Shown: piece by piece, positions 6,601 to 48,416 of the stretch | Layout of the letters: every line of letters starts with the position of its first letter | How positions within the stretch are numbered: position 1 is the first letter of the stretch | Virus record (IMG/VR): IMGVR_UViG_3300012931_000759 | Span: 186,001-250,000 of that record | Direction: 5' to 3' (one strand) | Length of the DNA stretch: 64,000 bases | Position numbers and translations under genes: made by a program | The notes under the pieces: generated by a model | The model's input: only the letters and a program-made list of their open reading frames with translations | What the model was told of the DNA's origin: nothing | Database searches by the model: none

Positions 6601-7602
6601 CTTGTCCGCCTAGCTATCGAGGGAGAGAAGGAATCCCACGAGGAGGCGGAGCACGAGGTTACTGAGGAAATGGAGGAAGGCATTGAAGGTCTCGAGGGTC
6701 TGATGGAGGAACTCGAGGGGATTGAGGAGAAGGAATCTGCCGCTCAGTATGCCGACGAGCCTGCCGCACAGTACGCTGAGGAAGAGGACCCTCTAGTGGC
6801 CGAACTCTTGTCCGAGCTGGACAAGGAAGAGGTGCCGGAGGAAGAAACCGACAACATGACTACCATGGCCGGGCGCCGTGCCTGGCGCGAGAAGGTGGCC
6901 GCCGAAGTCGGTTCGAAGTACCAGCTGAAGTTGGATTCCGCGACCGACATGGACACCGACATGGTACCCAAGGCGCATCCGCAGGGTGGGCACACTCTCG
7001 AGGGACTCGACACTAAACCCTCTGACGAGGGTGCCAAATTCGAGGGCATCGATGAGGTCAAGGCCAAGATTATGAAGCAGGTTGAGAGCTTGCCGCCTGT
7101 CCGCGAGGCCGTCGCCAAGGTGGGCGATCTGCTCAAGTCCGGCAAACTCACGGTGGCCGACCTGTCTAACAACGCCAAGCTGAAAGCGTTGGCGGTCGAC
7201 CCCGAGGCCGCCAAGTACTGGAAACAGTATTTTGGCGAGGGCGACCAAGATAGCAAGCAGTTTGGCGCTGACATGTCCAAGGAGTTCGCCCAGAAGAAGG
7301 CGGCCGCTGAGGCTGAGTCCTACAAGTTGAAACTCCGCAGGGCGGTCGATCTGGCGCTCGACATGCAGGACAAGGGTCTTGTTAGCTCAGGCCGCGAGGC
7401 CATGAACAAGCAGGTCGACGACATCATGAAATTCGACGACCAGGCATTCGAGGCCTTTAAGCGCGCAATGTCCCGCACCACCAATGTCGCGAAGGCCGCC
7501 GGGAAAGCTGAACCGGCCCTCCAGGTTGGCATCAGAGAGGAGGCGGAAACTACCAACCTCTCCGACCAGCTAGGACGTCTTTGGGCACCAAAGAAGCGAT
7601 AG
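3622..7602 (+). CDS. Prohead protease fused to a long scaffold-like region
   Basis: NNNGDIF, KPLCQDH, VSMGT, ELSLVVTGADPRA (prohead protease-like); acidic, coiled-coil C-terminal region; position in head module. Confidence 0.75.
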   Translation: MAFTKFAESRFTVEEIHAPEAALSDSVVLDRFTKYAKTLRAIAPKAKDFLYFSCVMLHSDTAALVNQDTGEPILGKDGKPVTAEWDINPKTGSYKWKCSDHNIKPFKNNNGDIFVESELKKAYRKWVEKPLCQDHQSNTVDGVRGLILDTYWDDKRKRVIGLCALDRKNYPDLARKVESGYATNVSMGTAVGRSICYDCGNVAKTEAEYCACVRAKRTYGEINIDLSPIELSLVVTGADPRAKLRHIIASLNGYAQQKQARIEELQRAGCVTPGELDSLRAEVEGLRRQLYEISRLHAQAALDPSHGAVLRNLLEIISNPATSAETKALADKQMKELLGGVASPEDLAKMETPAPAPTAAAEDGDGVEGAGCERVEDKPEGQMVSDVEPPYGLAGNKAMTGGRGRSYSEDPESSGPPPWSLDGRETRLASGNLDAQILAVQEWLDSMQTTLQKMAADIQASANRTNPKEEKNMSDLKERARARRAAFEKNAYHQGGGGVNEPQTYPKEEADKIRNTQDKQMVGEGMEPGNDGLAGSDLALKKKLLRADLEERRLRRHALLAKGEEIVKVKAPDGTDVSLTKGADGKWTVAPAQKDDDPGLEVNAYFQGGGGVNEPQTYPKEEADKIRNIQDKQMVGEGMEPGNDGLAGDDLALKKKLLRAELTAKFIKVYAGQDKAEVDRKRSRWEVYAGGQKLFEATGEQIYDEGDLVDDNYWNHLSSADYGRRIMSAIRREGLDKTAYLLTGKVVTAQEPALPPPGMPPAPMASPAEAPKPPEEELKSEEKPGAESAKNRVDEALADVEKALGDLKDVLKEEGESKEGGKEELPPIEIGEAAKTASDIRAALDDSGDELAILSEVLGKRIEAGMTAGTEMDELLKLAGESLEASAEIVREAALVVEAKKGKMPEGLKKALEKKENGGKDEEDEEKGKKKEKEKGKKDKKEEKGEKKEKGKKDEKEEKGEEKDEKEEKEEKKSEAELVLEKMLKARAAKRRELVRLAIEGEKESHEEAEHEVTEEMEEGIEGLEGLMEELEGIEEKESAAQYADEPAAQYAEEEDPLVAELLSELDKEEVPEEETDNMTTMAGRRAWREKVAAEVGSKYQLKLDSATDMDTDMVPKAHPQGGHTLEGLDTKPSDEGAKFEGIDEVKAKIMKQVESLPPVREAVAKVGDLLKSGKLTVADLSNNAKLKALAVDPEAAKYWKQYFGEGDQDSKQFGADMSKEFAQKKAAAEAESYKLKLRRAVDLALDMQDKGLVSSGREAMNKQVDDIMKFDDQAFEAFKRAMSRTTNVAKAAGKAEPALQVGIREEAETTNLSDQLGRLWAPKKR
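5089..5601 (+). repeat. Two ~174-bp (58-aa) direct repeats, 5089-5262 and 5428-5601
   Basis: NAY(H/F)QGGGGVNEPQTYPKEEADKIRN.QDKQMVGEGMEPGNDGLAG.DLALKKKLLRA twice. Confidence 0.95.
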
Positions 7603-9626: not shown

Positions 9627-9846
9627 ATGAAAAAATATAAAACAGACTATCAGGAATGGATAAAAGCTGATGTCGAACAATTGAAACAGAAATATGTTTG
9701 TGCCAAAGCGCGACCCCGGTTGTGCCAAGTATAAGACGGATAACGGCATCTGCCTATGCGTAGATTGTCATAACAGCATTAAAGGGCGCGAACACGAGAT
9801 GCGAGACAGATATCTCGCCATTGTTGCCTCCAAGGAGAGTCTATAA
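9627..9846 (+). pseudogene. Decayed HNH endonuclease remnant
   Basis: AT-rich; one frame reads KYKTDNGICLCVDCHNSIKGREHE..., the C-terminal half of an HNH motif. Confidence 0.6.
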
Positions 9847-10199
9847 TGCCTTTTGCACCCGAAGACAAGCGCGCGTGGCTTGACAGCGAGGTGATGGCCG
9901 AGCTAGAGAAGATTGCTAAGGAGACCGATCTCCTCGGTGGGCCTCCGAAGGAGGCTTTTGAGCCCATTGAGGAGAAGACTGCCGCCCAGTCCTCATGGGA
10001 GGACGAGGATGTGCCGGAGGCTCCGGCGGATCCGGACGCTGGCCGGCGCGCGGCGTTGGCGTCACACGGTGCGCGGCTCGCGAAGACACTGGAAAGGATG
10101 GCGCAGGATCTCGCCGAGGCTGGCCGTCCGAAAGCGGCCTATCGCCTGGAGCGGGCGCTTGCCGCCCTAAAGGATATCGCCGAAAAGGGAGGAGAGTGA
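9846..10199 (+). CDS. Putative internal head protein
   Basis: SEVMAELEKIA N-terminal motif; LERMAQDLAEAGRPKAAYRLE motif. Confidence 0.65.
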   Translation: MPFAPEDKRAWLDSEVMAELEKIAKETDLLGGPPKEAFEPIEEKTAAQSSWEDEDVPEAPADPDAGRRAALASHGARLAKTLERMAQDLAEAGRPKAAYRLERALAALKDIAEKGGE

Positions 10200-10200
10200 G

Positions 10201-13200
10201 ATGCGCCACATCAAACCGAGCGAGAGCACGGTGATGCAGGAGTTCGAACGTATCGCCGCTGAGAAGGGATGGATCGTACAGGTTGCCGCAAAGCCGGGCG
10301 AGTTTTTTATCGAGCAGACCAAGTCGGTAATGCCGCAGAGCAATACGCCTCCGGCCCCGGAGGACAAGCTGCTCGAAACCTGGTCCCGGCTATCCGACAA
10401 GGACAAGAATGCTCTCGTCATCGGTTGGGATGGAATGCTCCAGGCCCAGCTGCTCGACCAGTTGAAGCAGCCGGGTATACAGCGGAAGCTTCTGGAGAAG
10501 GCTAGCCAGCCTGCGGCCCCCGCTTCCGCGCCAGCCACGTCAGCCGCACCGGCCGCCGCGCAGTCTGAGAAACCCGCGAAGCGTAAATGGACGCGCGATG
10601 ACCTGGTGAAGGATGTCCAGTCCGTGCTCGCAATCCACTTCAAGGACCCTTCGAAAGTCGGCAAACGAGGGCCGGATGGATTCTGGGGACCGGCGACCGC
10701 CAAGGCCTGGAACGAGTGGATCGCCCAGACGGGCAACGACGCCGTCGCCAAGGCGGATCCGCGTGGGATGAAGCCGCCTCCCGACAAGGACATGTACTGG
10801 GTTGCGTACACCTATGGATCAACAATCAAGCCGAAAACCAAATCCCCGGCACCCGCCGGAGGTGGTCTGATCAACCCGTTCGAGGGTGACAAGGTGACGC
10901 CGGACCTCATCAATCCATGGGCGAAGGAGAGTTCGACAATGGCCAAGAACATCAGGACAGCGCAGGATCCGGTTCCGGAGCATGTTCCAACTGGACTCGT
11001 GAAAAAGCCACATGAGATGCCGATAGGTGCGGAATCGCCGACAACGATACAGGACATCGATAAAATGTTGGCTGGAACAAAGGAACCGACTCCAAACTAT
11101 GGAGAACAGCTTGTGTGGCAGATTCAGGAGGCGGTTCTGAGTTTAGTGCCGGGAGCACGCAGCCGCATGGTTGGCGCCAAGGCACCGGGCGGAGTGGATG
11201 GCATTTGGGGCCCGAAAACAGTCGGGGCCCTTAGCGAAGCTGCGCTTGTGTTCGATCTTCCAGAGACAACGCGCATCCTCAATTCCAGCAGAGACAGACG
11301 TCCTGGAACACAGGCGCTCCAGACGATTTTGTCGGAGCTTCTTCAGGCGGCAGAAAAAGGACAAGGAAAAGAAATGTCAACATTCCCAGCCAGTCCAGAA
11401 CATGTCCCCGCTGGCCTGGTCAAAGAGCCGCACATGACCAGATCTTGGCAAAATCATAGAGAACCAGAGTTTATGCGAAAATCATCTATCGATACAATCA
11501 ATGAGCTGGTGGCATTAGCTAACGATCTCGATGAGATGGGCGAGGTCAAGGTCGCCGAGGCCGTCGACGAGCAGCTTCACCTGTACAAGACCGCCTTCGA
11601 CAAGCTCTATGACATCACGGGCGAGACCGGCGAGCAACTAGTCGGCCAGGCCCATCCGGGCGGAGGTCCGACCATGGCACCCGCCAAGGACGAGGGTGGC
11701 AAAGTTGAGACCGTCGTGGAAGAGCAGCAGAAGGATCTGAAGGTGGTCAAGACCCAGCCTACCGGCAAGCAGGCCGCCTTTGTGGCACGCCAGCTCGTCG
11801 CGTTGGCCAACCGGCTGGATGCCGAGGGGAAAACGGAGGCCGCCCTGCTTGTCGACAAAACGCTCGCCGAGCTTCGGGAGGGCTCCGCCCGCCCTTTCGT
11901 CGTTAACGGTCTCCGCAAAGAGGCTCTATTTCCTGTGCTTCCTGCCCTCGTGATGGGTCTTGGTATCGGTTTGACGGCGCTTGTCCAACTGATGTCATCC
12001 CGCCAGGAAAACCTGGATGAGGATCTTGGCGATTATTTGGCGGTGTTGGATAAACTCGCACAAGACGATGCGAAATGGCAGCCCTATGCAAGCGGCCTAC
12101 GAACTACTTTGGAACCGTACCGCAAGATGTTCAAACAGCCGCCGCCCGAGGATGCAAAGGCTCGACAGGCACACAAGACCAAACTCTTGGAATTTGGCGA
12201 CACCATTCTGCCACAGATGGAACAAATGACCAATTCCATTCCCAAAAGTTGGTGGACCGTCGGTTTCGGGAAAGATTTCCGCATCAGGGACAAACTCGAC
12301 GATGTGAAGACATCCTACAACGAAATCCTTACCATCCTGAATAGGGCGGATGAATTGGCGGCTTCAAATAAGATCCCGGCCGACAAGACGCCATCCCCTG
12401 AAGCCGCCAAGGAGGAGCGGCCATACGAGAAGCAATTGCGGAAAACCCTGCGGGCATCCTATACTAAGTTTAAAGGCACGGTCGACCAATTGCTGAATGG
12501 GTTGGTCAAAGCGCTCCAGGATCCGGCCAAGGAAATCGAAGCCAACCAAATGCTTAAAGGCAAACTCAACGAGACGATAGATTGGTTGAAGACCCTGCGC
12601 CAGCAAAAGGAGCCCACAACCCTCACTGAGAGGAATACCCTCAACAACTACAACAATATCCTGTGGAATGACTATCTCGGACCTCTTCGCCGCAATCCAA
12701 AATTAGCCGACGTGTTCGCTTCGGTCAAGGATGGACATCTGGTGAGAGAAGCAGCTCCTCCAAAACCGGCTGCGCCGGGAATTCCAGGTGCGCCTGTCGG
12801 TCCATTGAACCAGCCTACGGCAAAAACCGGTCCAGCTAAGCCTAAGCCTGGCGTTCGGCGCCCGGCCAAAAAACCGCGTCTTGAATTACAACAGCTACAG
12901 CAGCTGATGCTGACGCTCAACCTGCCGCTCGGCACACGCAAGGCCGACGGTGTGTGGGGACCATACACAGCCAAGGCCTGGAATAGGCTCAACCACATGG
13001 TCGGTGGACGCCTCGGAGCCGCGCCCTCGGAGAAAACCGAGGGGCCCACGGCCGCCCAGATCGACGTCGCCACACGCGTGGCAAACGTGTTGACACGCCG
13101 CCAGGCGATTGTGGAGATCGCCCCCGGCATCTCTCTGCCGACAGGTGCTTTCGCCAATGTCCAGGTTTTCATGCGGGCCTTGGCCACGAGGCGTGCGGCG

Positions 13201-13851
13201 GGGATCGACACAAGCGGGAACCTCGATACGGCCGCCAATCGCAAGCGCGCGTTGGAACTGCTTCGCGGATTCGCCGGACGCATGGAGGACGAAGATATCC
13301 AGCTCAATCTCGCCGCCAAGCTCGGCACGCAGGAGGCCCAACGTCTGCCGCAGCAGATAAACACTCTGCTCGACGCGCTTGGCGCCGCCGAGACCGGCAT
13401 TCCGTCGTACCGCAGGCCGGAAGGCGAACGTCGCCCCGGATACGGCGAAAACCAGCCATATGGTCGCGGCGAGGGTAGCGCGAGTCCCTTCGGCACTTTG
13501 GAAGGCGGACGTCGCGGTCGCGGCGAGGGCGGCGAGATGGGCGGCTACGGAGAGGGACGTATGTCGCTGGAGAGCCGGGTCTACAACATCCCGGACGTCT
13601 CCGGTTTCGTGAATGATCCGATGCAGTTCGCGATCTGGGCCCAGCGGTACTGGCTGAGCCGGACCCGTGAGGAGGGCGAGCCCTACGCCATCGCCTACAA
13701 GGTGGTCAAGGCGCTGCGCGGCGACATCGCCAATCTCCAGAACGCGCTGATGCGGCAACCGGTGCGCAACCGCGACGAGCTCCAGACCACCCTACAGCAG
13801 CGGCACGAGGCGTTGATGGACGTGTACACCTCCCTGCCGAAGGGGCGATAG
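10201..13851 (+). CDS. Large putative internal/ejection protein with three peptidoglycan-binding-like motifs and a hydrophobic helix
   Basis: DGFWGPAT, DGIWGPKT, DGVWGPYT; two LVALANxLD motifs; hydrophobic segment after GLRKEA. Confidence 0.65.
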   Translation: MRHIKPSESTVMQEFERIAAEKGWIVQVAAKPGEFFIEQTKSVMPQSNTPPAPEDKLLETWSRLSDKDKNALVIGWDGMLQAQLLDQLKQPGIQRKLLEKASQPAAPASAPATSAAPAAAQSEKPAKRKWTRDDLVKDVQSVLAIHFKDPSKVGKRGPDGFWGPATAKAWNEWIAQTGNDAVAKADPRGMKPPPDKDMYWVAYTYGSTIKPKTKSPAPAGGGLINPFEGDKVTPDLINPWAKESSTMAKNIRTAQDPVPEHVPTGLVKKPHEMPIGAESPTTIQDIDKMLAGTKEPTPNYGEQLVWQIQEAVLSLVPGARSRMVGAKAPGGVDGIWGPKTVGALSEAALVFDLPETTRILNSSRDRRPGTQALQTILSELLQAAEKGQGKEMSTFPASPEHVPAGLVKEPHMTRSWQNHREPEFMRKSSIDTINELVALANDLDEMGEVKVAEAVDEQLHLYKTAFDKLYDITGETGEQLVGQAHPGGGPTMAPAKDEGGKVETVVEEQQKDLKVVKTQPTGKQAAFVARQLVALANRLDAEGKTEAALLVDKTLAELREGSARPFVVNGLRKEALFPVLPALVMGLGIGLTALVQLMSSRQENLDEDLGDYLAVLDKLAQDDAKWQPYASGLRTTLEPYRKMFKQPPPEDAKARQAHKTKLLEFGDTILPQMEQMTNSIPKSWWTVGFGKDFRIRDKLDDVKTSYNEILTILNRADELAASNKIPADKTPSPEAAKEERPYEKQLRKTLRASYTKFKGTVDQLLNGLVKALQDPAKEIEANQMLKGKLNETIDWLKTLRQQKEPTTLTERNTLNNYNNILWNDYLGPLRRNPKLADVFASVKDGHLVREAAPPKPAAPGIPGAPVGPLNQPTAKTGPAKPKPGVRRPAKKPRLELQQLQQLMLTLNLPLGTRKADGVWGPYTAKAWNRLNHMVGGRLGAAPSEKTEGPTAAQIDVATRVANVLTRRQAIVEIAPGISLPTGAFANVQVFMRALATRRAAGIDTSGNLDTAANRKRALELLRGFAGRMEDEDIQLNLAAKLGTQEAQRLPQQINTLLDALGAAETGIPSYRRPEGERRPGYGENQPYGRGEGSASPFGTLEGGRRGRGEGGEMGGYGEGRMSLESRVYNIPDVSGFVNDPMQFAIWAQRYWLSRTREEGEPYAIAYKVVKALRGDIANLQNALMRQPVRNRDELQTTLQQRHEALMDVYTSLPKGR

Positions 13852-18324: not shown

Positions 18325-19911
18325 ATGAGAACGAGGGAAAAAATCGATGACGCCATTCTGGCGGAGGACATCAGGAGCCTCTCGGAAAAGATCGGCAGAG
18401 TGCCGAGGCAGGAAGATTACAAGAAGGACGGAACCTTCGGCTTGAACACTCTGCTGCTCCGGAAGTCTTGGAACCAATGGCTGACGGAGATTTTTGGTCA
18501 GATCAATGAGGTTCGCAAAACCAAGCGAGAGAGGGCAACTGCTCTGGAGGTTTTGCTGGATATCAAATGCGTGTGTGACAAGTTGGGCAAACCTCCAACG
18601 CAGGCGGAGTACAAAGTGGCAGGCAAACACCCTTTGGGAACCATACTGCGGCACCGGAAATGGAACGATTGGTTGAAATTGGCCACTGGTTCCGTGAACT
18701 ACAACCGCACGGAGGACAGCAAAACCAGGAGGATAGGCGACCAGGATCTTGCCGATGATGTGCGGCGGGTGGCGACGGAACTGGGGCACGCCCCGACTCG
18801 GAGCGAATACAACGAGCATGGTCGCCATTCCTCCGACACCATTGTGGTTAGGATGCCTTGGATGGAATTCATCCAGAAGGTTTGTGGGCTTGAGCCATCA
18901 AAAATTGCGTCCGTCAACAGGTCGAAGGCGACCAACGAGGAACTGCTGGCCCAGTTGAAAAGATTGGCGACGACTTTAGATCGAACGCCCCTGAAGGAAG
19001 ATCTGGGTGGTCAAAACGGATTCTGCTACACCGCATATGTTCGTGCCTTTGGCACTTTCGGCAATGCCCTTGTTGCCGCTGGATTGATCAATCCCCTGAA
19101 CCGCTATTGTGTTCCTCGCGAGGAACTGGTTGTCGAACTGAAGCGGGTGTATGGTCTGCTCGGCCACACGCCGTCCGAAACGGAGTTCCTGGAAAACAGC
19201 CCCATACGCAGCAATGGTTCGATATATTCCGAGTTCGGCTCCTGGACAAAGGCGTTCCTTGCTGCAGGTATTCCAGTTATAAAGGCCAGAAATATCTCCG
19301 TGGACGACATCAAGATCGCCTTGCAGAAATGGCATACTGCCAACAATGGCGACGATTCCTGCCTCGAATACTGGAAAATAAGAAAAGCAAAGAAAAACAA
19401 ACAGTTTCCATATTCGCCAAACTCCGTCAGCGCGAAGTTCCATCCACTATCCTGGGAAGAGATTATGCGCGAATGCGGATTCCCAAACTATGTAACCAAG
19501 GATCGTTATGTTACAGGGCGTAAACGCGGCGACCACACCGGAGCCGACGGCAACGAGTACCTATCCTCCCTGGAGAAGGAGATTGGCGATTTCCTGTTCG
19601 AATTGAAGGGCTCGGGAAATATCCTGGACTACGAATATGAGGCCAAAATATGCCCCGACAAGAACTGGACATGCGACTTCAAGGTGACGATGCGCGATGG
19701 CAGGGCTGTCTGGCTGGAGGCCGACGGCCTCCGCAACAACCGCAACCGACCCTACTCCTCGGGCAACAACGAAAAGATCGCATTCTATGGCAACAACGGA
19801 ATGGATTGTCGCATAGTGTCGTATTCCTCTCCCAATATCCGATGGGCGGTGGCCGACAGCCTAGCCTTGCCATTGCCGGTCCCCACCAATCCGCGAAAGG
19901 AAAACTTATGA
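18325..19911 (+). CDS. Protein with ~6 homing-endonuclease-associated helical repeats and a C-terminal PD-(D/E)XK nuclease
   Basis: Repeated L..V...LG..P...EY...FG.W..AL units; SSLEKEI...YEYE...TCDF...WLEADG. Confidence 0.75.
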   Translation: MRTREKIDDAILAEDIRSLSEKIGRVPRQEDYKKDGTFGLNTLLLRKSWNQWLTEIFGQINEVRKTKRERATALEVLLDIKCVCDKLGKPPTQAEYKVAGKHPLGTILRHRKWNDWLKLATGSVNYNRTEDSKTRRIGDQDLADDVRRVATELGHAPTRSEYNEHGRHSSDTIVVRMPWMEFIQKVCGLEPSKIASVNRSKATNEELLAQLKRLATTLDRTPLKEDLGGQNGFCYTAYVRAFGTFGNALVAAGLINPLNRYCVPREELVVELKRVYGLLGHTPSETEFLENSPIRSNGSIYSEFGSWTKAFLAAGIPVIKARNISVDDIKIALQKWHTANNGDDSCLEYWKIRKAKKNKQFPYSPNSVSAKFHPLSWEEIMRECGFPNYVTKDRYVTGRKRGDHTGADGNEYLSSLEKEIGDFLFELKGSGNILDYEYEAKICPDKNWTCDFKVTMRDGRAVWLEADGLRNNRNRPYSSGNNEKIAFYGNNGMDCRIVSYSSPNIRWAVADSLALPLPVPTNPRKENL

Positions 19912-32465: not shown

Positions 32466-32477
32466 GGGAGGAAAAAA

Positions 32478-32966
32478 ATGGCCATCGTGATCGGATTTTC
32501 CACGTCGGACGGCTTTATCTCGAAAGCCATCCGCTGGTTCAGCAGGAGCGAAGTTAGCCACGCCTGGGTCTCTTTCGACTGCGGGGAACTTGAGCAGAGG
32601 CTCATCATGCATGCTACATCCGGCGGCTACAAACTCAACCACTGGCGGCGATGGAAAAAGGGCAACACAATTGTTGCCCAATTCGTCTGCCGTGAAGACC
32701 TGTCGGATGGTCTGAGAAAAATGGCGAAACAGCTTGACCACGACTACGACTACCTGTCCGTCATTATGATGATGCCGCGGCGATGGCTGGGCAAATTGTT
32801 CAGGAATCCCGTGCGCGACAGAAAGAAACTACACTGCTCCGAGGCCTTGGCGCGCCTGCTACAGGCGCATGGTTTTGCGAAAGATTTGGATCCCGAGTCT
32901 ACGACGCCGGGCGATCTGCTAGAGTTCTGCCGCAACAGTCCCACCTTCGTGTCGGTGGGCGTATGA
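32478..32966 (+). CDS. Permuted papain-like (YiiX/NlpC-P60) amidase
   Basis: SHAW (His) before YDY and HCSE (Cys); TPGDL. Confidence 0.75.
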   Translation: MAIVIGFSTSDGFISKAIRWFSRSEVSHAWVSFDCGELEQRLIMHATSGGYKLNHWRRWKKGNTIVAQFVCREDLSDGLRKMAKQLDHDYDYLSVIMMMPRRWLGKLFRNPVRDRKKLHCSEALARLLQAHGFAKDLDPESTTPGDLLEFCRNSPTFVSVGV

Positions 32967-33628
32967 TCGTCGTCGTTAGCGATCTACACATTGGCGACAA
33001 CCGTGTTGATGGCAACCTGTCCTCCCTTTTTGGGACGATCGAACGCCTGGCAGCTCCGGACTCACATCTTGTCCTCAACGGGGACACGTTCGACCTGGCG
33101 GTTCTTCCCTGTTTCGACAGCCGACACCGCGAGTTCATCTCGGTGGCCAGGAAACACGGCCGGATCACCTATATCAAGGGAAACCACGATTGGCTCGTGG
33201 ATGGTCTCGACGACGCACTTGCGCCGAACACCCTGTTCTGCCACGAATTCGAGGAGACCTTGGGGGGACGCCGGTTCAGGTTTCTACACGGCCACCAGTC
33301 GGACTTTATCTCTAATAGGCTGCCGCGACTGAACCGGATCATGATTCGCGCAAACCATTGGATCGCGGATACACTGGGTATCGACCTACAGATGAGGCTC
33401 CGTGCGACTGGCATTGGGCAGCGCACCTTGGAGCGGCAGGAGAACCGGATCGCCGAGAACAGTCCTGGGGCCCACGTCGTCGTGGCTGGGCACACGCACC
33501 GACCTGGTATTCGCCTGGTAGGCGGACGCATGTATGTCAATACCGGCGACTGGATGGAGCGTAGACATTGCTCCTATCTGCTGATTCGGAACGATGGGAC
33601 GTTCGAACTGACTACGCTTGAGGGATAG
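32963..33628 (+). CDS. Metallophosphoesterase (LpxH-like)
   Basis: SDLHIG, NGDTFD, GNHD, HGH, GHTH, YVNTGDW. Confidence 0.85.
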   Translation: MIVVVSDLHIGDNRVDGNLSSLFGTIERLAAPDSHLVLNGDTFDLAVLPCFDSRHREFISVARKHGRITYIKGNHDWLVDGLDDALAPNTLFCHEFEETLGGRRFRFLHGHQSDFISNRLPRLNRIMIRANHWIADTLGIDLQMRLRATGIGQRTLERQENRIAENSPGAHVVVAGHTHRPGIRLVGGRMYVNTGDWMERRHCSYLLIRNDGTFELTTLEG

Positions 33629-33631
33629 GCC

Positions 33632-34282
33632 GTGCCGAAGACACAGATACATGGCAGCGATGTCGACATAGAAACCTCGATGCGGCTAGCTCAGCTGACG
33701 TTGGATGGCTATGGTTTCGACGGAAATGAGCAGCCAGAGGCGATGGTAGGTCTCGTCATGAGGAGCGGCGACAACGGACCCGTTACGCTCATGGTTGCGG
33801 CAGCAGACGGTTACATCGAACAGGTGGCGGCGGGACACGTCACCCTGCGCGGATTTACCTCCATCCAGAACAACGCCGAGGTTCATGGCGACTTCGCCAG
33901 CAACAAGCTTGCGAACGGCCAGGAGACGGATGTCAAGACCGTGACAGCCTTGGTCTCCGTTGCGGCCGCTGCGCAGCAGGCGACCTCCATCCAGATTCCC
34001 ATAAACTCCGAAGTGTTGGGCGTGTCGATCCACGTTTCCGTGAAGCCGCCGGGTACATCCTCGATGGATGTTGGTGTGGCCGGATCTGCTTTGTCCAGGC
34101 GAAGGTATGGTGTGAATCTGTCAACTGACGCTGGGACGTCTCATCCCGGTATCGAATCGCCAGGCTTGTCATATCTTGCTGCCACGCCCATAACACTCTC
34201 CTTCAACATCGCCCCGTCCGACGGCAGCGGTCTCATCAGAATTACAATCCACTACAGGGCCATCATTCCCGCCTCGAGTTAG
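33632..34282 (+). CDS. Putative virion structural protein
   Basis: MPKTQIHG N-terminus; 2 DGY; beta-sandwich-like C-terminus. Confidence 0.6.
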   Translation: MPKTQIHGSDVDIETSMRLAQLTLDGYGFDGNEQPEAMVGLVMRSGDNGPVTLMVAAADGYIEQVAAGHVTLRGFTSIQNNAEVHGDFASNKLANGQETDVKTVTALVSVAAAAQQATSIQIPINSEVLGVSIHVSVKPPGTSSMDVGVAGSALSRRRYGVNLSTDAGTSHPGIESPGLSYLAATPITLSFNIAPSDGSGLIRITIHYRAIIPASS

Positions 34283-34289
34283 GAACAAT

Positions 34290-35834
34290 ATGGACAAACA
34301 GCAGGTCAGGACATGCCTGGACGCCACGTTCGCGGCGGGGGACAAGGCGGCCTACATGAGGCTGGCCAACGCCCGCTTCATGGCCTCCGTCGTAGAGGTA
34401 TTGTGGGACATACGCGGTGAGATGGTTGCTCTCTCCCAGGACGCGACGGCCTTCCGGCAGTTGTCGGAGCGGATTGAATCGGCTCGCAAGCAGCCGGGTG
34501 TCCGCGGACGCTGCCTTGAGGTCTTTCCCGCCGAGAGACGCGCGCTGGTCCGTTTCGGAGGCATCAGGGAGGAGGTGACGGTTTCGCCGCACCTAGAGAT
34601 GGAGAGTCTTGGACCCGGCACAGAAGTGCTGATACAGGGCAACCAGACCGGCGGAAGAACAATCGCCGACATCCGCATGGACACGGGATTCGACGGTTGT
34701 ATAACGACCATCGCCGAGATGCTCGATGGATACCGCGCAGCGATCGACGAGAATGGCGCCAAGGTCATCGCGCAGATAGCCGGAGGCTTGGATTGCGTGG
34801 CCGGAAACACCGTACGGTACGATCCGGTGGCGCACCTGGTCCTGGAGGTTCTGGAGCGCGGCGAGATCGCGGCACTCCGACTGGAGAAGCCCCCGAAACA
34901 CACTTTCGACGACATCGGCGGCTTGACCGAGCAGAAGCTTATGTTACGCGAACGGCTGATTTATCCTGTCATCTATAAGGAGGTATTCGTCAAGTACGGC
35001 TTAGAGGTAGCGAAGGGTGCGTTACTTTATGGACCACCCGGATGCGGAAAAAATCTGCTAGCAAGCGCTGTTTTCAACGAGATGCGCGTCTTGCGCGGTG
35101 GGAAAACGACGGAGGGCTTTTTTGTCATCAATGGTCCCGAGTGTCTATCCGAATGGGCAGGAAAAACCGAGCGGACGATTCGCGAGGTTTTTCAGAGGGC
35201 AAGGGAGGCTGCGGATAAAAGCGGATTGCCTTCCGTGGTATTCTGGGACGAATTGGAGAGCCTTGCCGGCACCAGGCGAGATTCGCCCACATATATGCCC
35301 GAGAAAACAGTGGTTCCCACCCTGCTGGCTGAACTTCAGGGTCTGGAGGAACATGGTGGCGTCGTTTTACTGGCGGCTACGAACCGCCCGGATCTGGTGG
35401 ATCCGGCACTTCTGCGCCCAGGCAGACTTGGCGATGTTCTGGTGGAAGTTCCGCGCCCCAACAGGGGCGCCGGAGCCGACATCCTAGTAAAACATTTCCG
35501 CAGAGAATTGCCATCGACGCTCGCGGCGATGGTTGATCATGGGTTGGTTGAGCGGCTGGTTGCGCACATTTACGATACAGAGTTGCCGCTTGCGGCGCCG
35601 CGAGGCGGCGTGCTGAGGCGTGACTTGGTAAGTGGTGCATTGTGTGCGCAAATCGCAAAAGAACTCATACTTTCTGCCTGTTTATCAGAGATTTGCGGCA
35701 CACAAGGACCTACAATGAAAGATGGATTGGCAGTGGCTGACCGGCTTATACTGGCGCAGATCCTTGCGCAGACAAGCGATAACGGCGGATCCCTACTAGT
35801 CCGACCACTTCAGACGGGAGGATATCCTGGCTGA
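34290..35834 (+). CDS. AAA+ ATPase resembling proteasomal ARC/Mpa/PAN
   Basis: N-terminal coiled coil and two OB-like blocks; TFDDIGGL, GPPGCGK, VFWDE, ATNRPDLVDPALLRPGRL. Confidence 0.85.
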   Translation: MDKQQVRTCLDATFAAGDKAAYMRLANARFMASVVEVLWDIRGEMVALSQDATAFRQLSERIESARKQPGVRGRCLEVFPAERRALVRFGGIREEVTVSPHLEMESLGPGTEVLIQGNQTGGRTIADIRMDTGFDGCITTIAEMLDGYRAAIDENGAKVIAQIAGGLDCVAGNTVRYDPVAHLVLEVLERGEIAALRLEKPPKHTFDDIGGLTEQKLMLRERLIYPVIYKEVFVKYGLEVAKGALLYGPPGCGKNLLASAVFNEMRVLRGGKTTEGFFVINGPECLSEWAGKTERTIREVFQRAREAADKSGLPSVVFWDELESLAGTRRDSPTYMPEKTVVPTLLAELQGLEEHGGVVLLAATNRPDLVDPALLRPGRLGDVLVEVPRPNRGAGADILVKHFRRELPSTLAAMVDHGLVERLVAHIYDTELPLAAPRGGVLRRDLVSGALCAQIAKELILSACLSEICGTQGPTMKDGLAVADRLILAQILAQTSDNGGSLLVRPLQTGGYPG

Positions 35835-35838: not shown

Positions 35839-35856
35839 CTATCAATAACGAAGCAT
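35839..35856 (+). promoter_or_regulatory. Putative phage late promoter
   Basis: CTATCAAT AACGAAG CAT, intergenic. Confidence 0.7.
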
Positions 35857-35962
35857 TAAATTGGAATATGAGCCGGTGCGATCACCGGTTGTGTTTTGCT
35901 TTCAATGGAAGGCAGTTGGCATTCCAGTCTTTGGTTCATGTTTAGTTAAAGGGAGTCGGCAG

Positions 35963-36385
35963 ATGCCTCGGACCCAGATCAGAGGCACCCAGACTTGCGA
36001 TGGTTCCATAACCTCTGCGAATCTTGCGGATGGTGCGGTTGTCACGACGAAATTACAGGACCTGGGTGTTACTGAGCAAAAGTTGGCCAGCGATGTGGCG
36101 ACGCGCCTATTGAGCACGGCGTCCCCTGTTGGCCGGGTCCATTTTGGATATGCCATTCCCGCTGACACAGATATAACGATTCCTGGGATAATCACGTATG
36201 CCTCCCTTGCGGATTTCCTAAATAGGCTAGTCGTGACGCTAAATGGCCAGATGATGTATAACGGAGCTGCGGCCCCGGTAACACCGGATGATCCGACCGA
36301 TGTTTATCCGGGAAGTTCGGACAGTCAAATCAGATTCTCTTTCGCGCTTGAGCGCGGCAGCAGAATCCAGGTGGTTCGCCTATGA
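35963..36385 (+). CDS. Putative virion fibre-associated protein
   Basis: GGGAG RBS; MPRTQIRG; DGSIT..LADGAV.T.KL repeat; VTLNGQ domain. Confidence 0.6.
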   Translation: MPRTQIRGTQTCDGSITSANLADGAVVTTKLQDLGVTEQKLASDVATRLLSTASPVGRVHFGYAIPADTDITIPGIITYASLADFLNRLVVTLNGQMMYNGAAAPVTPDDPTDVYPGSSDSQIRFSFALERGSRIQVVRL

Positions 36386-36633
36386 GCACCGACGCAAAAA
36401 ACAGGTACACGACTAGTGACATCGCCGTCGCGGCCTATTTAAAGCTCAAGGGTGTGCGGCTTGTGGATTGTGGGAAGGATGGGCAGAAATTTTCCTTTAT
36501 TTTCGAGGATCCCAACGATAACTGTGGTGACCTCGCGCTGGAGTTTATCAACAGCGACTGCCGTCGCTACGACGATGAGATGCGGTCGCTGAAGAAAGTT
36601 TTGTACAGCAAGGGGAAGAGGGAGATTCACTGA
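36382..36633 (+). CDS. Small phage protein (DUF5659-like)
   Basis: TSDIAVAAYL...G...F.F pattern. Confidence 0.55.
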   Translation: MSTDAKNRYTTSDIAVAAYLKLKGVRLVDCGKDGQKFSFIFEDPNDNCGDLALEFINSDCRRYDDEMRSLKKVLYSKGKREIH

Positions 36634-36673: not shown

Positions 36674-38269
36674 ATGTCTCGCAGCAGGTTTCGCGCTTCG
36701 GCGCTCGACCCCAATGATAGTTTTTCTTTCGCCAACGTCACTGTCGATGGATACTCCGGCGAAGAACTAAACGAGGGGTACCAGACCGGTATTGTCCTTA
36801 AGTACGGTCCGACAGGCGCAACCAAGCTGACGCTGGCCGCAGCCGACGGCGCCATCACCCAGAGCGGCACGGGCCTCGTGTCGTTCAACGGCAACGTTCA
36901 TGCAAATAACGACATGCTGGTTCTCGGCAACTTCACGGTTATGGGTACTACGACCGAGATCGACACTGACCAGATGTTCGTGACCGATCCGATCACGACC
37001 CTGAACGCTTCGGGCAGCGAGCTGCTCAGCCAGTGGTCCGGTCTCTCAATCCGCGACGCTGACGGCTACAACCGCATCGGCTGGTCTTTCGATGGCTACT
37101 GGGCCCTCTCCACGGCAGCCGTGGCAGGTATGGACGCCAACCCCGATAGGGCAATCGCCTTCGTGGGCTCCACTTTCACCAATGGTGACCTGTCCGTGAT
37201 CTCGTCGCATGCCGGTTCTGGTGCGCATAAGGTCGGTGTCTTTCCGACCGGCAACCTGATCTCCGACAATGTCCAGAATGCCCTCGAGGAACTACAGGGC
37301 GAGATCGATGCCCTGATCCCCGGTTCTGTCACTTCGGCTGAGGGCACTACGAGCCTCAACTGGACCATCCACAAGTACGATGCTCCGTTCACGCAGGAGT
37401 CCCCTTGCCTGATCGAGCACGGCGGGAACGGCCTTGGCAGCGAGCTCGACGGCTATCTTTGTACCATCACAGATCCGACCCAGCCCTACCGGATGCAGTT
37501 CAAGATGTACAAAGACGCCGTCCTTATCGATCCCTCCGTCCATATCGGTGTCTACGGAGGCGTCGAGGATCTGAACTCTAGCCTGGTGTTCAACGCTGGC
37601 ACGGGCGCGGCCGCCAAAATCGCAAGCATCAAGCTGTGGGGTACTGAGGATAGGCTGATCTACGACGCCACCGAGCACAATTTTGCCGGTCCCGTCGAGA
37701 TGTACAACAGTCTCCTGGTCGATGGCTACCTCGACGCCTACGGTAACGTGGCTCTTGGCGACTCTTCGTCCGACACCCTGTACGTCGGCGCGACTATCGT
37801 AAGCAGCCTCCTGCCGGAGAACAACCTACACCTGCTAGGCGACCCGACGCACCGCTGGATGGACGGCTACTTCGACTTCTTCGTCCCGACCTACTACACG
37901 CCGGTCGGCAGCAACTACAGCCTCGAGGGGCACCTGAAGGGCATTGACGCGAAGCTGGGAACCATTACCAACTTCACGCACGGCGCCTACATTATCACGG
38001 CTGGCGAGGCTGCCACTGACACGCTGGACTCGTCGCGGGCGGTCAACCAAGGGATCCAGGCGGATGTGGGCTCGCTCACGGACACACAGTTCCTTAACAA
38101 CGTTTACGTCTACCTTGACGGCCAGCTGCTCCTGAACGATACGGCAAAGCGAGCCAACAACGGGGCAGTCGTGAACGACGTGGCCAGGGACAGCGCGACC
38201 CCCAGCCTGCTGCGCTTCAACCGCGACGTTAAGAAGGGTGCGATCCTACAGATTGTTATCACGATGTAG
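36674..38269 (+). CDS. Probably abundant virion fibre/structural protein
   Basis: GGAGG RBS, strong codon bias; GNFTVMGTTT...V.DP.ITLN and NVQNALEEL fibre motifs; 6 DGY. Confidence 0.7.
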   Translation: MSRSRFRASALDPNDSFSFANVTVDGYSGEELNEGYQTGIVLKYGPTGATKLTLAAADGAITQSGTGLVSFNGNVHANNDMLVLGNFTVMGTTTEIDTDQMFVTDPITTLNASGSELLSQWSGLSIRDADGYNRIGWSFDGYWALSTAAVAGMDANPDRAIAFVGSTFTNGDLSVISSHAGSGAHKVGVFPTGNLISDNVQNALEELQGEIDALIPGSVTSAEGTTSLNWTIHKYDAPFTQESPCLIEHGGNGLGSELDGYLCTITDPTQPYRMQFKMYKDAVLIDPSVHIGVYGGVEDLNSSLVFNAGTGAAAKIASIKLWGTEDRLIYDATEHNFAGPVEMYNSLLVDGYLDAYGNVALGDSSSDTLYVGATIVSSLLPENNLHLLGDPTHRWMDGYFDFFVPTYYTPVGSNYSLEGHLKGIDAKLGTITNFTHGAYIITAGEAATDTLDSSRAVNQGIQADVGSLTDTQFLNNVYVYLDGQLLLNDTAKRANNGAVVNDVARDSATPSLLRFNRDVKKGAILQIVITM

Positions 38270-40774: not shown

Positions 40775-41260
40775 TTGGCTATGCCGATGTCGTCAGGCAC
40801 TTTCAGGGACATGGATCGCCGGGAACTGGTAAAGCGCATTCGCCGGGAATTGAAGAACGAAAAGGCTATCCTCGAGATCCTGGACAAGTACAATCTTGAT
40901 CCATCCATAATCGACCATGTGTCCATCAAGTTCGAGCCTCTGGATGTCTCGGCGAAAACTGTGGATGGCCACGTCATTCTCAACGAGAGGCTGCTTGATG
41001 GCGACTGGCGCGATATTGTCCGCTACGCAACCCACGAGTTGACCCATGTTGCACAACAGACCACCTCCGATATAGAAAAAACACAGGATCTCGATTACTT
41101 GGATGATCCTTATGAAAAAGAAGCTTTCCGGACACAAAGGAAAGTAATGGAGGAACTCTACGATCCGGAGGAAATACAGTCATATCTTGAAGGTTTGGTT
41201 GACCATCATGGTCTAAAAGGCAAGGAACGTCTCCGCAAGATCAGGGAATTGAAGCGGTAG
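40775..41260 (+). CDS. HEXXH zinc metallopeptidase-like protein (start possibly 40811)
   Basis: THELTHVAQ...PYEKEAF. Confidence 0.7.
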   Translation: MAMPMSSGTFRDMDRRELVKRIRRELKNEKAILEILDKYNLDPSIIDHVSIKFEPLDVSAKTVDGHVILNERLLDGDWRDIVRYATHELTHVAQQTTSDIEKTQDLDYLDDPYEKEAFRTQRKVMEELYDPEEIQSYLEGLVDHHGLKGKERLRKIRELKR

Positions 41261-48079: not shown

Positions 48080-48416
48080 TAGCAACGGGAGTTACAACGG
48101 CGTACAGTACCCATCGCGTAAATGGAAACTCGTCCTACTGGTCGTGATCCTGGCGACCATTGGCGCTTTTCTGCCGCCGCTCATCAGTGCGTGGCTGCTG
48201 GGTGCCGAGAAGCCTATGGTGCTTTTGTCCGGCACCGAGTGGGTCAGCGTGATCACCTTGAGCGTGAGCGCATATTTTGGTGCCAACGTCTGGCAGAAAC
48301 ATGTCAAGAAGAGGCACCAGCTGGACCTTGAGGCCAGCGGCGTCGTGGGCGATGCGACCGAGCCGGCGGGCGGCGACGACGACAAGGAAGAGGACGACAG
48401 TGGAAAAGAGGCCTGA
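48069..48416 (+). CDS. Holin-like membrane protein
   Basis: SRKW followed by two hydrophobic helices and a charged C-terminus. Confidence 0.55.
   Translation: MKDNSNGSYNGVQYPSRKWKLVLLVVILATIGAFLPPLISAWLLGAEKPMVLLSGTEWVSVITLSVSAYFGANVWQKHVKKRHQLDLEASGVVGDATEPAGGDDDKEEDDSGKEA

What the first reader, a model, noticed from the sequence alone, without database searches (positions are those of the whole stretch)
34290..35834. Phage-encoded proteasomal-type ATPase with altered Walker A and tail
Seen: coiled coil, two OB-like blocks and AAA domain like ARC/Mpa; Walker A reads GPPGCGKN (Asn where Thr/Ser is usual); C-terminus TGGYPG versus the GQYL proteasome-docking tail of Mpa; one DGY in the N-domain. 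No proteasome or Pup genes are in this window. Inference: a fibre-assembly chaperone, or a dominant-negative or hijacking subunit for host proteolysis; it may also hint at the host lineage.
Basis: partly seen in the sequence, partly recalled or inferred. Interest (0 to 1): 0.6.

Follow-up and report, generated by a model that had tools for sequence, protein, structure and literature searches.

The report
Jumbo-phage ARC/Mpa-type unfoldase without proteasome
A clade of giant phages carries its own copy of the ring-shaped protein-unfolding motor that bacteria use to feed tagged proteins into the proteasome, but the phages have no proteasome, tag or docking tail, so the motor probably works alone on targets still unknown.

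Summary
ORF 34290-35834 (+) encodes a 514-aa protein with a long N-terminal helix, two OB domains and one AAA module. Its best matches are the Mpa/ARC model TIGR03689 (261 bits, below the 505 cut-off) and M. tuberculosis Mpa structures (Z 26, 400 residues aligned). It lies in a 340-kb jumbo myovirus record that has no proteasome, Pup, Pup ligase or ClpP.

It belongs to a small, purely phage family (~26 sequences, ~8 clusters among 1.84 billion representatives). The family is monophyletic and nests inside the double-OB ARC clade, next to cellular ARCs encoded beside Pup-ligase genes. Gene order around it is conserved down to 42% identity, in phage contigs of 30-57% GC.

The Walker A Asn occurs in only 2 non-sister members and in 0 of 77 cellular ARC-like proteins. 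The gene is under purifying selection (dN/dS 0.10), and GKN is the native motif of TorsinA and DnaC. The C-terminal tail varies by subclade and never has a penultimate Tyr.

Best reading: a stand-alone ATP-driven unfoldase or remodeller, an old core gene of this phage clade; its target is unknown. Proteasome hijack, dominant-negative action and a host-lineage hint are not supported.

The parts
34290..35834 (+). ARC/Mpa-type AAA+ ATPase gene (514 aa, P0001)
   Evidence: ORF and translation; TIGR03689 260.9 bits; Mpa is the top structural match
34290..34487 (+). N-terminal helical region: short helices at residues 3-25 and a long helix at 28-66 (the coiled-coil equivalent); W39 is invariant in the family
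   Evidence: AF2 secondary structure; invariant columns
34500..34856 (+). Tandem OB domains (OB1 residues 71-128, OB2 residues 137-189)
   Evidence: AF2 strands; sub-threshold Pfam PF17758 and PF16450 hits; aligned to Mpa from residue 97 onward
34887..35774 (+). Single classical-clade AAA module (core residues 200-390, lid 392-495)
   Evidence: PF00004 at E 5e-30; the AAA domains of PAN, FtsH and p97 align at rmsd 2.4-3.1
35031..35054 (+). Walker A GPPGCGKN; the Asn codon AAT at 35052-35054 replaces the usual Thr. The same site hosts inteins in relatives
35151..35162 (+). Pore-1 loop EWAG (aromatic-hydrophobic-Gly); W289 and G291 are invariant in the family
35235..35252 (+). Walker B VVFWDE (D320 and E321 invariant); FWDE[IL][ED] is a family signature
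35373..35426 (+). Sensor-1 Asn365 and arginine fingers R376 and R379 (RPGR), all invariant
35775..35831 (+). Disordered C-terminal tail ending LQTGGYPG; no penultimate Tyr; differs between subclades
   Evidence: pLDDT below 50; family C-termini
32783..33628 (+). Calcineurin-like metallophosphoesterase, always upstream of the ATPase in relatives. Its true start is probably near residue 61, since relatives are ~221 aa
   Evidence: Pfam; synteny
33632..34282 (+). 216-aa protein whose N-terminal ~100 residues are paralogous to the 531-aa protein downstream; present in part of the family
   Evidence: BLASTP E 7e-11; synteny
35839..35890 (+). Conserved intergenic elements after the ATPase stop: motif CTATCAATA (35839-35847), then a hairpin with a U-tract (35871-35890) that shows compensatory changes in relatives
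35963..36385 (+). ~140-aa protein with a tail-fibre-like N-terminal repeat; a conserved downstream neighbour
   Evidence: PHROG tail-fibre families at E 7e-6; synteny
36382..36633 (+). DUF5659 small protein; a conserved downstream neighbour
   Evidence: Pfam E 2.6e-9; the atlas shows a viral family of unknown function
36674..38269 (+). 531-aa fibre-like protein; a conserved downstream neighbour
   Evidence: Synteny; shares its N-terminal domain with the 216-aa protein; the fold attempt failed

Best explanation
The gene encodes a phage version of the bacterial ARC/Mpa ring unfoldase.

By homology it should assemble into a hexamer. The N-terminal helices would project as coiled coils that capture a substrate or adaptor. 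The double-OB ring would form the entry collar. The AAA ring would pull polypeptide through the central pore with its Trp-containing pore loops, driven by ATP.

It has no proteasome-docking tail, and the phage encodes no proteasome, Pup, Pup ligase or ClpP. The most likely mode of action is therefore a stand-alone unfoldase, disassembly or remodelling machine.

It is an ancient, vertically inherited core gene of one clade of jumbo myoviruses. Its place in the late tail and fibre region is fixed: metallophosphoesterase, sometimes a 216-aa fibre-like protein, the ATPase, a ~140-aa fibre-like protein, DUF5659, then a ~531-aa fibre-like protein. Its most probable clients are phage late proteins, meaning fibre or baseplate assembly or quality control. 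That step is inference from position only.

In this phage the Walker A Thr is replaced by Asn. This is a sporadic variant that probably lowers the ATPase rate without abolishing nucleotide binding or function.

Shown: architecture, family membership, phylogeny, absence of partner genes, synteny, purifying selection. Inferred: hexamer, translocation, stand-alone action, clients.
For: Architecture and closest relatives:
- TIGR03689 is the best family model, matched over nearly the full length.
- Mpa is the top structural match: E ~1e-30, Z 26.1, 400 residues aligned at 32% identity, covering both OB domains and the AAA module.

Catalytic and translocation residues:
- Lys254, Walker B D320/E321, sensor-1 N365, R376/R379 and pore-loop W289/G291 are invariant across 19 aligned members.

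Phylogeny:
- The family is monophyletic (SH-aLRT 100) inside the double-OB ARC clade when rooted on Cdc48 D1/D2.
- It lies near cellular ARCs that are encoded beside JAB and Pup-ligase genes.

No protease partner or tag:
- PF00227, PF03136, PF05639 and PF00574 are absent from the 340-kb record.
- The related 301-kb phage also lacks PF00227.
- No family member has a penultimate Tyr.

Precedent for ARC without a proteasome:
- The control genome Corynebacterium glutamicum rings for Pup and Pup ligase but not for the proteasome family.
- The review PMC8223512 lists the study linking its pupylation machinery to ferritin.

Core-gene status:
- Gene order is conserved in 6 contigs down to 41-42% identity and from 30% to 57% GC.
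- P-loop inteins are present in 4-5 members.

Still functional:
- dN/dS is 0.098 against the nearest relative, and branch dN is 0.053 versus 0.062.

GKN tolerated elsewhere:
- It is the native TorsinA motif, and N109T did not change TorsinA chaperone activity. DnaC also has Asn at this position.

Structural-module context:
- Tail-fibre PHROG hits in neighbours.
- A paralogous N-terminal domain in the flanking 216-aa and 531-aa proteins.
- Beta-helix proteins and a tail sheath downstream.
Against: - No experiment exists, and hexamer formation and activity are inferred by homology only.
- The link to fibres is positional. A conserved 100-130 nt gap with a motif and a terminator-like hairpin directly after the ATPase gene suggests a transcription boundary between it and the downstream fibre-like genes.
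- The constant upstream partner is a metallophosphoesterase (plus a patatin-like gene in some relatives), which looks more like accessory enzymes than structural genes.
- The record is only 84% complete, so a partner gene could lie in the missing part.
- The phage encodes a Lon protease elsewhere, so a link to proteolysis is not excluded.
- Asn after the Walker A Lys is absent from 77 cellular ARC-like representatives. A paper read here cites a report that the Thr-to-Asn change lowers ClpB activity. This particular copy may therefore be a weak or switch-like ATPase.
- The AAT codon could not be checked against reads.
Confidence: 0.55

Rival explanations
1. Counter-defence or tag reader. The phage kept the ARC coiled-coil and OB receptor to recognise host Pup-type or ubiquitin-like conjugates, for example tags placed on phage tail proteins. 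It would then unfold or strip the tagged proteins, or sequester the tag.
For: The nearest cellular relatives sit in operons that combine ThiF/E1-like, JAB, ARC-like and two Pup-ligase genes. The phage gene sits among fibre-like genes. The N-terminal helix carries invariant residues such as W39.
Against: No tag, ligase or deconjugase gene is in the phage. The function of the cellular operons is not established here, and no paper was found. The N-domain is only ~20% identical to the cellular ones. The host is unknown.
Confidence: 0.1
2. This copy is a catalytically crippled, switch-like or scaffold ATPase. The Asn at the Mg-coordinating Walker A position would reduce hydrolysis so far that the protein acts by ATP-dependent binding rather than by threading.
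For: None of 77 cellular ARC-like representatives has Asn there. TorsinA and DnaC, which do, are described as very slow ATPases. A paper read here cites a report that the same change lowers ClpB activity.
Against: All other catalytic and pore residues are intact. dN/dS is 0.10 with no acceleration on this branch. The same change arose independently in P0020, which suggests it is tolerated. The TorsinA N109T reversion had no effect on chaperone activity.
Confidence: 0.12
3. Hijacker or activator of a host protease: the ring docks on the host 20S proteasome, or another host peptidase, and redirects degradation.
For: Overall Mpa-like architecture. A flexible C-terminal tail is present. P0001 and P0002 have a Tyr three residues from the end.
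Against: No penultimate aromatic residue in any member. The tail sequence differs between subclades (GGYPG, GGLSG, DVSLNA), and Tyr is replaced by Leu in the next relatives. According to the review read, docking needs the C-terminal GQYL/HbYX motif with its penultimate aromatic residue and the terminal carboxylate. The family spans phages of 30-57% GC, so many hosts are unlikely to have proteasomes.
Confidence: 0.06
4. Dominant-negative subunit that mixes into host ARC/Mpa hexamers and poisons them through the altered Walker A.
For: In small GTPases, Asn at the equivalent P-loop position gives dominant-negative proteins (own knowledge, not tested here).
Against: The Asn is absent from 24 of ~26 family members, including the closest relative. 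Identity to Mpa is ~30% and to the nearest cellular ARC 35%, which is too low for likely co-assembly. Full-length conservation of pore and catalytic residues under purifying selection is not expected of a mere poison subunit.
Confidence: 0.03
5. Substrate-delivery partner of a phage-encoded protease: the Lon protease at G000 ~14.5-16.9 kb, or the prohead-protease-like domain in the 1326-aa protein at window 3622-7602.
For: Both protease genes exist in the same genome.
Against: Lon carries its own AAA module and substrate-binding domain. The genes are about 200 kb and 27 kb away. No known docking mode exists.
Confidence: 0.04

Closest known systems
Mpa/ARC, the Pup-proteasome system ATPase of Actinobacteria (TIGR03689; PDB 5kwa, 5kzf, 7px9)
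   Same: N-terminal helix, tandem OB domains and a single classical AAA module. It is the best HMM and the best structural match. Pore loop, Walker B, sensor-1 and Arg fingers are conserved.
   Different: Scores about half the equivalog cut-off (261 vs 505 bits). About 95 residues shorter. No GQYL or penultimate Tyr. No pup, pafA, dop or prcAB in the genome. Branches outside the clade that holds the GQYL/GHYL-tailed proteins. Walker A Asn in this copy.
Non-canonical cellular ARC-like ATPases of uncultured bacteria (Ca. Glassbacteria, KSB1 and metagenomic relatives), encoded beside ThiF, JAB and two Pup-ligase genes
   Same: The closest cellular sequences: 35% identity, shared FWDE and PEKT-type motifs, and the same double-OB plus AAA layout. 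They are neighbours of the phage clade in the tree. They also lack a terminal GQYL.
   Different: They are 545-590 aa and sit in conjugation-type operons, and most carry a [HR][YF][LIV]xxxA-like tail. The phage proteins have none of these neighbours and a different tail.
PAN / Rpt1-6 proteasomal ATPases
   Same: Coiled coil, OB and AAA logic. The AAA domain superposes at rmsd 2.4-3.1. They are the second tier of Foldseek hits.
   Different: One OB domain rather than two. They carry a HbYX tail. HMM scores are lower (164-167 bits vs a 500 cut-off) and cover only residues 138-405.
ARC of Corynebacterium glutamicum (a pupylation system without a 20S proteasome)
   Same: A precedent for an ARC-type ring acting without a proteasome. 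The control genome has Pup and Pup ligase but no PF00227. The ferritin study is listed in PMC8223512.
   Different: It still depends on Pup and PafA/Dop, which the phage lacks.
TorsinA and E. coli DnaC (AAA+ proteins with a native GxxxxGKN Walker A)
   Same: The same Thr/Ser-to-Asn replacement after the Walker A lysine.
   Different: Different AAA+ clades. TorsinA also lacks its own Arg finger and has Asn after the Walker B Asp. The phage protein keeps DE and both arginines. The resemblance is one residue, not homology beyond AAA+.
Phage AAA proteins annotated 'proteasome-associated ATPase' (Brevundimonas phages Strzyga and Polewnik) and PHROG 30773/3757
   Same: AAA domain similarity: 37% identity over residues 192-460.
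   Different: No OB domain hits. They lie in an early-gene-like context of small hypothetical genes. They are not members of this family.

Membership tests
Mpa/ARC (TIGR03689 pup_AAA equivalog) | Whole-protein score at or above the curated equivalog cut-off (504.75 bits) | tested here: not met
   260.9 bits; it is the best family, aligned over residues 47-456
Mpa/ARC (TIGR03689 pup_AAA equivalog) | Tandem double OB domain between the coiled coil and the AAA module | tested here: met
   AF2 beta domains at 71-128 and 137-189; aligned to Mpa from residue 97 with Z 26.1; sub-threshold PF17758 and PF16450 hits, which pass threshold in relatives
Mpa/ARC (TIGR03689 pup_AAA equivalog) | N-terminal coiled coil that binds Pup | tested here: inconclusive
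   A long helix at 28-66 is predicted. Pairing and ligand binding were not tested. No Pup is in the genome.
Mpa/ARC (TIGR03689 pup_AAA equivalog) | C-terminal GQYL-type motif with a penultimate aromatic residue for 20S docking (PMC8223512) | tested here: not met
   The protein ends in GGYPG, and no family member has a penultimate Tyr
Mpa/ARC (TIGR03689 pup_AAA equivalog) | Encoded with pup, pafA/dop and, usually, prcAB | tested here: not met
   PF05639, PF03136 and PF00227 are absent from the 340-kb record, which is 84% complete. PF00227 is also absent from the related 301-kb phage.
Mpa/ARC (TIGR03689 pup_AAA equivalog) | Canonical Walker A GxxxxGK[ST] | tested here: not met
   GPPGCGKN. Cellular ARC-like representatives have T in 76, S in 1 and N in 0.
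Double-OB ARC-like superfamily (broad sense) | Phylogenetic placement inside the clade when rooted on Cdc48 D1/D2 | tested here: met
   The ARC-like clade has SH-aLRT 100; the phage family nests within it with support 100, and its sisters join at 99
PAN/Rpt proteasome-activating nucleotidases | Single OB domain, HbYX tail, score at or above 500 bits | tested here: not met
   167 and 164 bits, aligned only from residue 138; two OB domains; no HbYX
Cdc48/VAT/p97 | Two tandem AAA domains plus a Cdc48-type N domain | tested here: not met
   One AAA domain only. The high phmmer scores of Cdc48 come from two aligned stretches. Cdc48 forms the outgroup clade in the tree.
Generic phage AAA proteins (PHROG 30773, 3757 and others) | AAA module without OB domains | tested here: not met
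   PHROG hits cover only residues ~197-424. The Brevundimonas phage homologue lacks OB hits.

The most novel reading that the evidence does not exclude
The phage ARC-type ring is a reader of host protein tags. It would recognise Pup-like or ubiquitin-like conjugates that a host conjugation system attaches to phage tail or fibre proteins, and unfold or strip them. It would thus be a counter-defence derived from the very ATPase of such host operons (ThiF-JAB-ARC-Pup-ligase).
Probability: 0.07. Interest if true: 0.85.

Novelty: new variant of a known kind. Interest (0 to 1): 0.5.

Why it matters
ARC/Mpa-type unfoldases are known as the gatekeepers of the bacterial Pup-proteasome system. A monophyletic, purely viral branch with no tag, no ligase, no proteasome and no docking motif is a natural experiment in what this motor can do alone. 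This branch has been kept as a core late-region gene across very divergent jumbo phages, and inteins have repeatedly invaded its P-loop.

It offers a tractable entry into phage-encoded proteostasis or virion-assembly chaperones in giant phages. It also points to an uncharacterised cellular operon type (E1-like, JAB, ARC and two Pup ligases) from whose ATPase lineage the phage gene seems to derive. The sporadic GKN Walker A gives a natural pair (Asn vs Thr, 81% identical proteins) for testing how this substitution tunes an AAA+ motor.

No paper describing such a phage ATPase was found in the searchable library.

Tried and rejected
1. Pup-like tag. A 117-aa acidic protein (window 9846-10199) ends in KGGE like Pup. 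It has no Pfam Pup hit. Its 40%-identical homologue in the related jumbo phage ends LLLEVK. No other viral relatives were found. Rejected as chance.

3. Word search with the N-domain alone found only the closest relatives. It was replaced by the exhaustive profile search.

4. Fold of the 531-aa fibre-like neighbour gave pLDDT 33, which is unusable, so no fold search was run.

5. PHROG scan of the neighbours of the sister-lineage ATPase P0318 (L013) gave no hits, so recurrence next to structural genes could not be tested.

6. DUF5659 neighbour. PDB and atlas searches show only a viral family of unknown function.

7. 'Phage' database hits. The Brevundimonas phage 'proteasome-associated ATPase' has no OB domains. 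The 'UNVERIFIED Bacteriophage sp.' scaffold MT835496 carries an OB-OB-AAA-Pup-ligase frame and looks bacterial.

8. Convergent co-substitutions shared by the two GKN proteins: none of note.

9. Consensus sigma-70 promoter and terminator counts are at chance.

10. No complex-prediction job was sent. No specific partner pair was well enough motivated, and ring formation is already expected from homology.

11. Intein-bearing members were left out of the tree (rows P0005, P0006, P0013, P0025, P0241), as were fragments shorter than 480 aa.
Full report
**1. The observation**

The ORF at 34290-35834 (+) is real. It encodes 514 residues, starts 8 nt after the upstream stop, and has an AGGAA ribosome-binding site.
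- Walker A is GPPGCGKN (residues 248-255), with Asn codon AAT at 35052-35054.
- The C-terminus is ...LQTGGYPG.
- There is a single DGY at residues 146-148.

Pfam finds the AAA domain (E 5e-30). Both proteasomal-ATPase OB models hit just under their thresholds. Among NCBIfam models the best is TIGR03689, the Mpa/ARC equivalog. It aligns residues 47-456 to profile positions 23-447 of 512, but scores 260.9 bits against a cut-off of 504.75. PAN models score 164-167 bits and align only from residue 138.

An AlphaFold2 model built on 19 family members (pLDDT 77) shows these parts:

| Residues | Element |
|---|---|
| 3-25 | short helices |
| 28-66 | long helix |
| 71-128 | first beta (OB) domain |
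| 137-189 | second beta (OB) domain |
| 200-390 | AAA core |
| 392-495 | lid |
| 496-514 | disordered tail |

The 30 best Foldseek matches in the PDB are all M. tuberculosis Mpa (E ~1e-30, ~470 columns), followed by Rpt subunits. VIA-align gives Z 26.1 with 400 aligned residues, 32% identity, model 68-500 against Mpa 97-601. The description as an ARC/Mpa-like protein is confirmed.

**2. The genome**

The window is bases 186001-250000 of a 340,392-bp IMG/VR virus record, estimated 84% complete. The window also holds:
- a tail sheath gene;
- large beta-helix proteins;
- a protein with a prohead-protease-like domain;
- several proteins with tail-fibre-type motifs.

This is a jumbo myovirus. The whole record lacks the proteasome family PF00227, the Pup ligase/Dop family PF03136, Pup PF05639 and ClpP PF00574. 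The control genomes gave the expected hits in each search. About 200 kb from this locus the phage does encode a complete Lon protease and a further AAA protein.

**3. The family**

A word-indexed search of 5.8 billion proteins found about 25 full-length or intein-bearing relatives at 42-81% identity. All are metagenomic. Below them come only length-summed Cdc48 hits.

An exhaustive profile search with the N-terminal helix plus double-OB region against 1.84 billion cluster representatives gave only 10 hits at E <= 1e-30. Eight are phage-family clusters and two are seed sequences. After a gap come about 200 clusters of 545-700-aa ARC-like proteins.

The family's signature peptides (FWDE[IL][ED], PEKTVVPT) occur in one further viral contig, of 301,683 bp. 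Among 185,579 species genomes they occur only in one Ca. Glassbacteria MAG. That Glassbacteria gene (585 aa, 35% identical) lies directly between a JAB protein and two Pup-ligase-family genes, so it is a genuine cellular Pup-system ARC.

Gene order around the phage ATPase is conserved in six contigs, in this order:
- patatin-like gene (in some contigs);
- metallophosphoesterase;
- a 216-aa protein (in some contigs);
- the ATPase;
- a ~140-aa fibre-like protein;
- DUF5659;
- a ~530-720-aa fibre-like protein;
- three small ORFs;
- a ~295-aa protein;
- further on, a ~660-aa protein and a ~1300-aa beta-helix protein.

These contigs range from 30% to 57% GC. The gene is therefore an old, vertically inherited component of this phage clade and not a recent host acquisition. 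It says little about the host.

**4. Phylogeny**

The tree has 114 rows:
- 21 phage proteins;
- 5 cellular ARC-like seeds;
- 76 full-length ARC-like representatives;
- 12 Cdc48 D1/D2 modules as outgroup.

It was built with IQ-TREE (LG+C20 PMSF, quick search) and shows the following:
- All double-OB proteins form one clade (SH-aLRT 100).
- The phage family is monophyletic (100).
- Its sisters are two metagenomic proteins, P0250 and P0318 (99). P0318 lies in a viral-looking contig of same-strand ORFs with no Pfam hits.
- Next come P0297 and the Glassbacteria/KSB1 group.

P0297 and P0253 sit in operons of the form ThiF, three small ORFs, JAB, ARC-like ATPase, Pup ligase, a 64-aa ORF and a second Pup ligase. 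Proteins with GQYL, GHYL or GHYF tails, the canonical Mpa/ARC, fall in a different clade.

The protein is also not a canonical Mpa orthologue.

Caveats:
- Support values come from the quick search only.
- Intein-bearing members and fragments were left out.

**5. The two 'altered' features**

*(a) Walker A*

Among 26 family members the residue after the Walker A lysine is distributed as follows:
- Thr in 18;
- Thr as the +1 extein residue in the intein-bearing members (shown for the four aligned members; the fifth is inferred from its length and its GK|A junction);
- Ser in 1;
- Asn in 2: this protein and P0020.

The two Asn proteins are not sisters, and the closest relative (81% identical) has Thr. 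The change therefore arose twice. None of 77 full-length cellular ARC-like representatives has Asn. The codon is AAT against ACC and ACG in the nearest relatives.

The gene is under strong purifying selection: dN/dS is 0.098 at dS 1.19. Its branch is not accelerated: dN is 0.053 against 0.062. Lys254, Walker B D320/E321, sensor-1 N365, R376/R379 and the pore loop [E/K]-W-[A/V/I]-G are invariant or nearly so.

GxxxxGKN is the native Walker A of TorsinA, where reverting it (N109T) did not change chaperone activity. E. coli DnaC also has Asn there. Both are described as very slow ATPases, and the same change is reported to lower ClpB activity (PMC5628414 and bioRxiv 10.1101/2022.06.23.497301). 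The most economical reading is a tolerated, lineage-specific variant that probably slows hydrolysis. It is not a family feature and not evidence of a poison subunit.

*(b) The tail*

The last residues are:
- GGYPG in two members;
- GGLSG in four;
- a conserved D[VI]SL[NS][AG]-type ending in most others.

None has a penultimate aromatic residue. The review PMC8223512 names the GQYL/HbYX-type C-terminal motif, with its penultimate aromatic residue and the free carboxylate, as what docks on the 20S alpha ring. Docking on a proteasome is therefore unsupported. Only 9 of 77 cellular ARC-like representatives have the canonical tail.

**6. Mechanism**

By homology the protein should form a hexameric ring. 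The coiled coils would act as receptor, the double-OB ring as entry collar, and the AAA ring as an ATP-driven translocase.

The phage has no peptidase partner of a known docking type and no tag system, so a stand-alone unfoldase or remodeller is the best-supported mode. A precedent is the ARC of Corynebacterium glutamicum, which has Pup and Pup ligase but no proteasome (controls; the ferritin study is listed).

What it acts on is unknown. Evidence for a role with late tail or fibre proteins:
- The gene has a fixed position in the tail and fibre region.
- It is flanked by two proteins that share an N-terminal domain (E 7e-11).
- A protein with tail-fibre motifs follows it.

Evidence that weakens this:
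- A conserved 100-130-nt gap follows the ATPase gene in all relatives. It holds the motif CTATCAATA and a hairpin with compensatory changes and a U-tract. This suggests a transcription boundary.
- The constant upstream neighbour is a metallophosphoesterase, not a structural gene.

I put about 0.75 on 'active or weakly active ARC-type ring that does not dock on a proteasome'. I put about 0.25-0.3 on 'clients are fibre or baseplate proteins'. Overall confidence in the combined statement is 0.55.

**7. Novelty**

Cultured-phage records contain only AAA-domain look-alikes. The Brevundimonas phage 'proteasome-associated ATPase' has no OB hits. A scaffold labelled 'UNVERIFIED Bacteriophage sp.' carries an OB-OB-AAA-Pup-ligase reading frame and is probably bacterial. 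Three literature searches found no description of a phage ARC/Mpa-type ATPase.

I rate it a new variant of a known kind. It is a viral, partner-less branch of the ARC family, and its biology is open.

**8. Limits**

- The record is incomplete.
- The host is unknown.
- The fold of the main fibre-like neighbour failed.
- No complex prediction was run, because no partner pair was well motivated.

Noticed in passing
P0005, P0006, P0013, P0025 (alignment A2) and P0241; the site corresponds to window 35049-35054: Four aligned family members, and a fifth judged by length and junction, carry a ~350-400-aa intein with LAGLIDADG/Hom_end domains. It is inserted exactly inside the Walker A motif (GPPGCGK | A...HN | T). 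The intein starts with Ala, and the Walker A Thr serves as the +1 residue.
   Followed up: partly
G000:C1 ~12.4-17.5 kb, outside the window (L008:469-2784 and L009:766-2154): The same phage encodes a complete Lon protease (LON substrate-binding, AAA, lid and Lon_C domains; 772 aa). Directly upstream lies a 463-aa AAA protein.
   Followed up: partly
window 2189, 16260, 22726, 35839, 56099 (+) and 52012 (-); 16 sites in G000: The 9-mer CTATCAATA occurs 16 times in the genome against ~1.4 expected. It is mostly intergenic and is often followed 6-8 nt later by a CATTAA or CATAAA-like element, or by a hairpin. One copy lies just before the tail sheath gene and one just after the ATPase stop. It is conserved at the latter place in relatives of 42% identity. 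It is a candidate phage promoter or 3'-end element.
   Followed up: partly
L014:2683-12168, L006:1400-7216, and the contig of P0297: Cellular ARC-like ATPases nearest the phage clade lie in a recurrent operon: ThiF/E1-like, three small ORFs, JAB, ARC-like ATPase, Pup ligase, a 64-aa ORF and a second Pup ligase. Most of these ATPases end in a [HR][YF][LIV]xxxA-like tail instead of GQYL. No proteasome family hit was found in the (incomplete) Glassbacteria MAG.
   Followed up: partly
window 9846-10199 (+): A 117-aa acidic protein, helical at its C-terminal end, finishes in KGGE like Pup. Its homologue in the related phage (L012:1483-1842, minus strand) ends LLLEVK, so the ending is probably chance.
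   Followed up: yes
window 33632-34282 and 36674-38269: The 216-aa and 531-aa proteins flanking the ATPase share an N-terminal ~100-residue domain (33% identity, E 7e-11). This is what alternative fibres attaching to one adaptor would look like.
   Followed up: partly
window 48178-48271 (+): ARAGORN calls a 94-nt tRNA-His with anticodon ATG. Both the length and the anticodon are unusual, and it overlaps a minus-strand ORF. It may be a false call or an intron-bearing tRNA.
   Followed up: no
window 18325-19911 (+): A 528-aa protein with four HNH_repeat (homing-endonuclease-associated) repeats (E 5e-50).
   Followed up: no
window 3622-7602 and 10201-13851 (+): Two very large proteins (1326 and 1216 aa). 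One has a prohead-protease-like segment and the other an endolysin-like segment near the N-terminus. They may be internal or ejected virion proteins.
   Followed up: no
window 32466-32962: There is a gap of about 300-500 nt upstream of the metallophosphoesterase gene. The ORF is 281 aa here against ~221 aa in relatives, where the preceding gene abuts it. The gap has terminator-like hairpins on both strands.
   Followed up: no
L018 (MT835496.1 38120-43911): A GenBank scaffold labelled 'UNVERIFIED: Bacteriophage sp.' holds a 1021-aa frame joining OB_N, OB_C, a truncated AAA domain and a full Pup-ligase domain. It is probably bacterial DNA or a frame-fused assembly rather than a phage gene.
   Followed up: partly
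window 40775-41260 (+): A 161-aa protein with a borderline eCIS_core domain hit (22.5 bits against a cut-off of 22).
   Followed up: no
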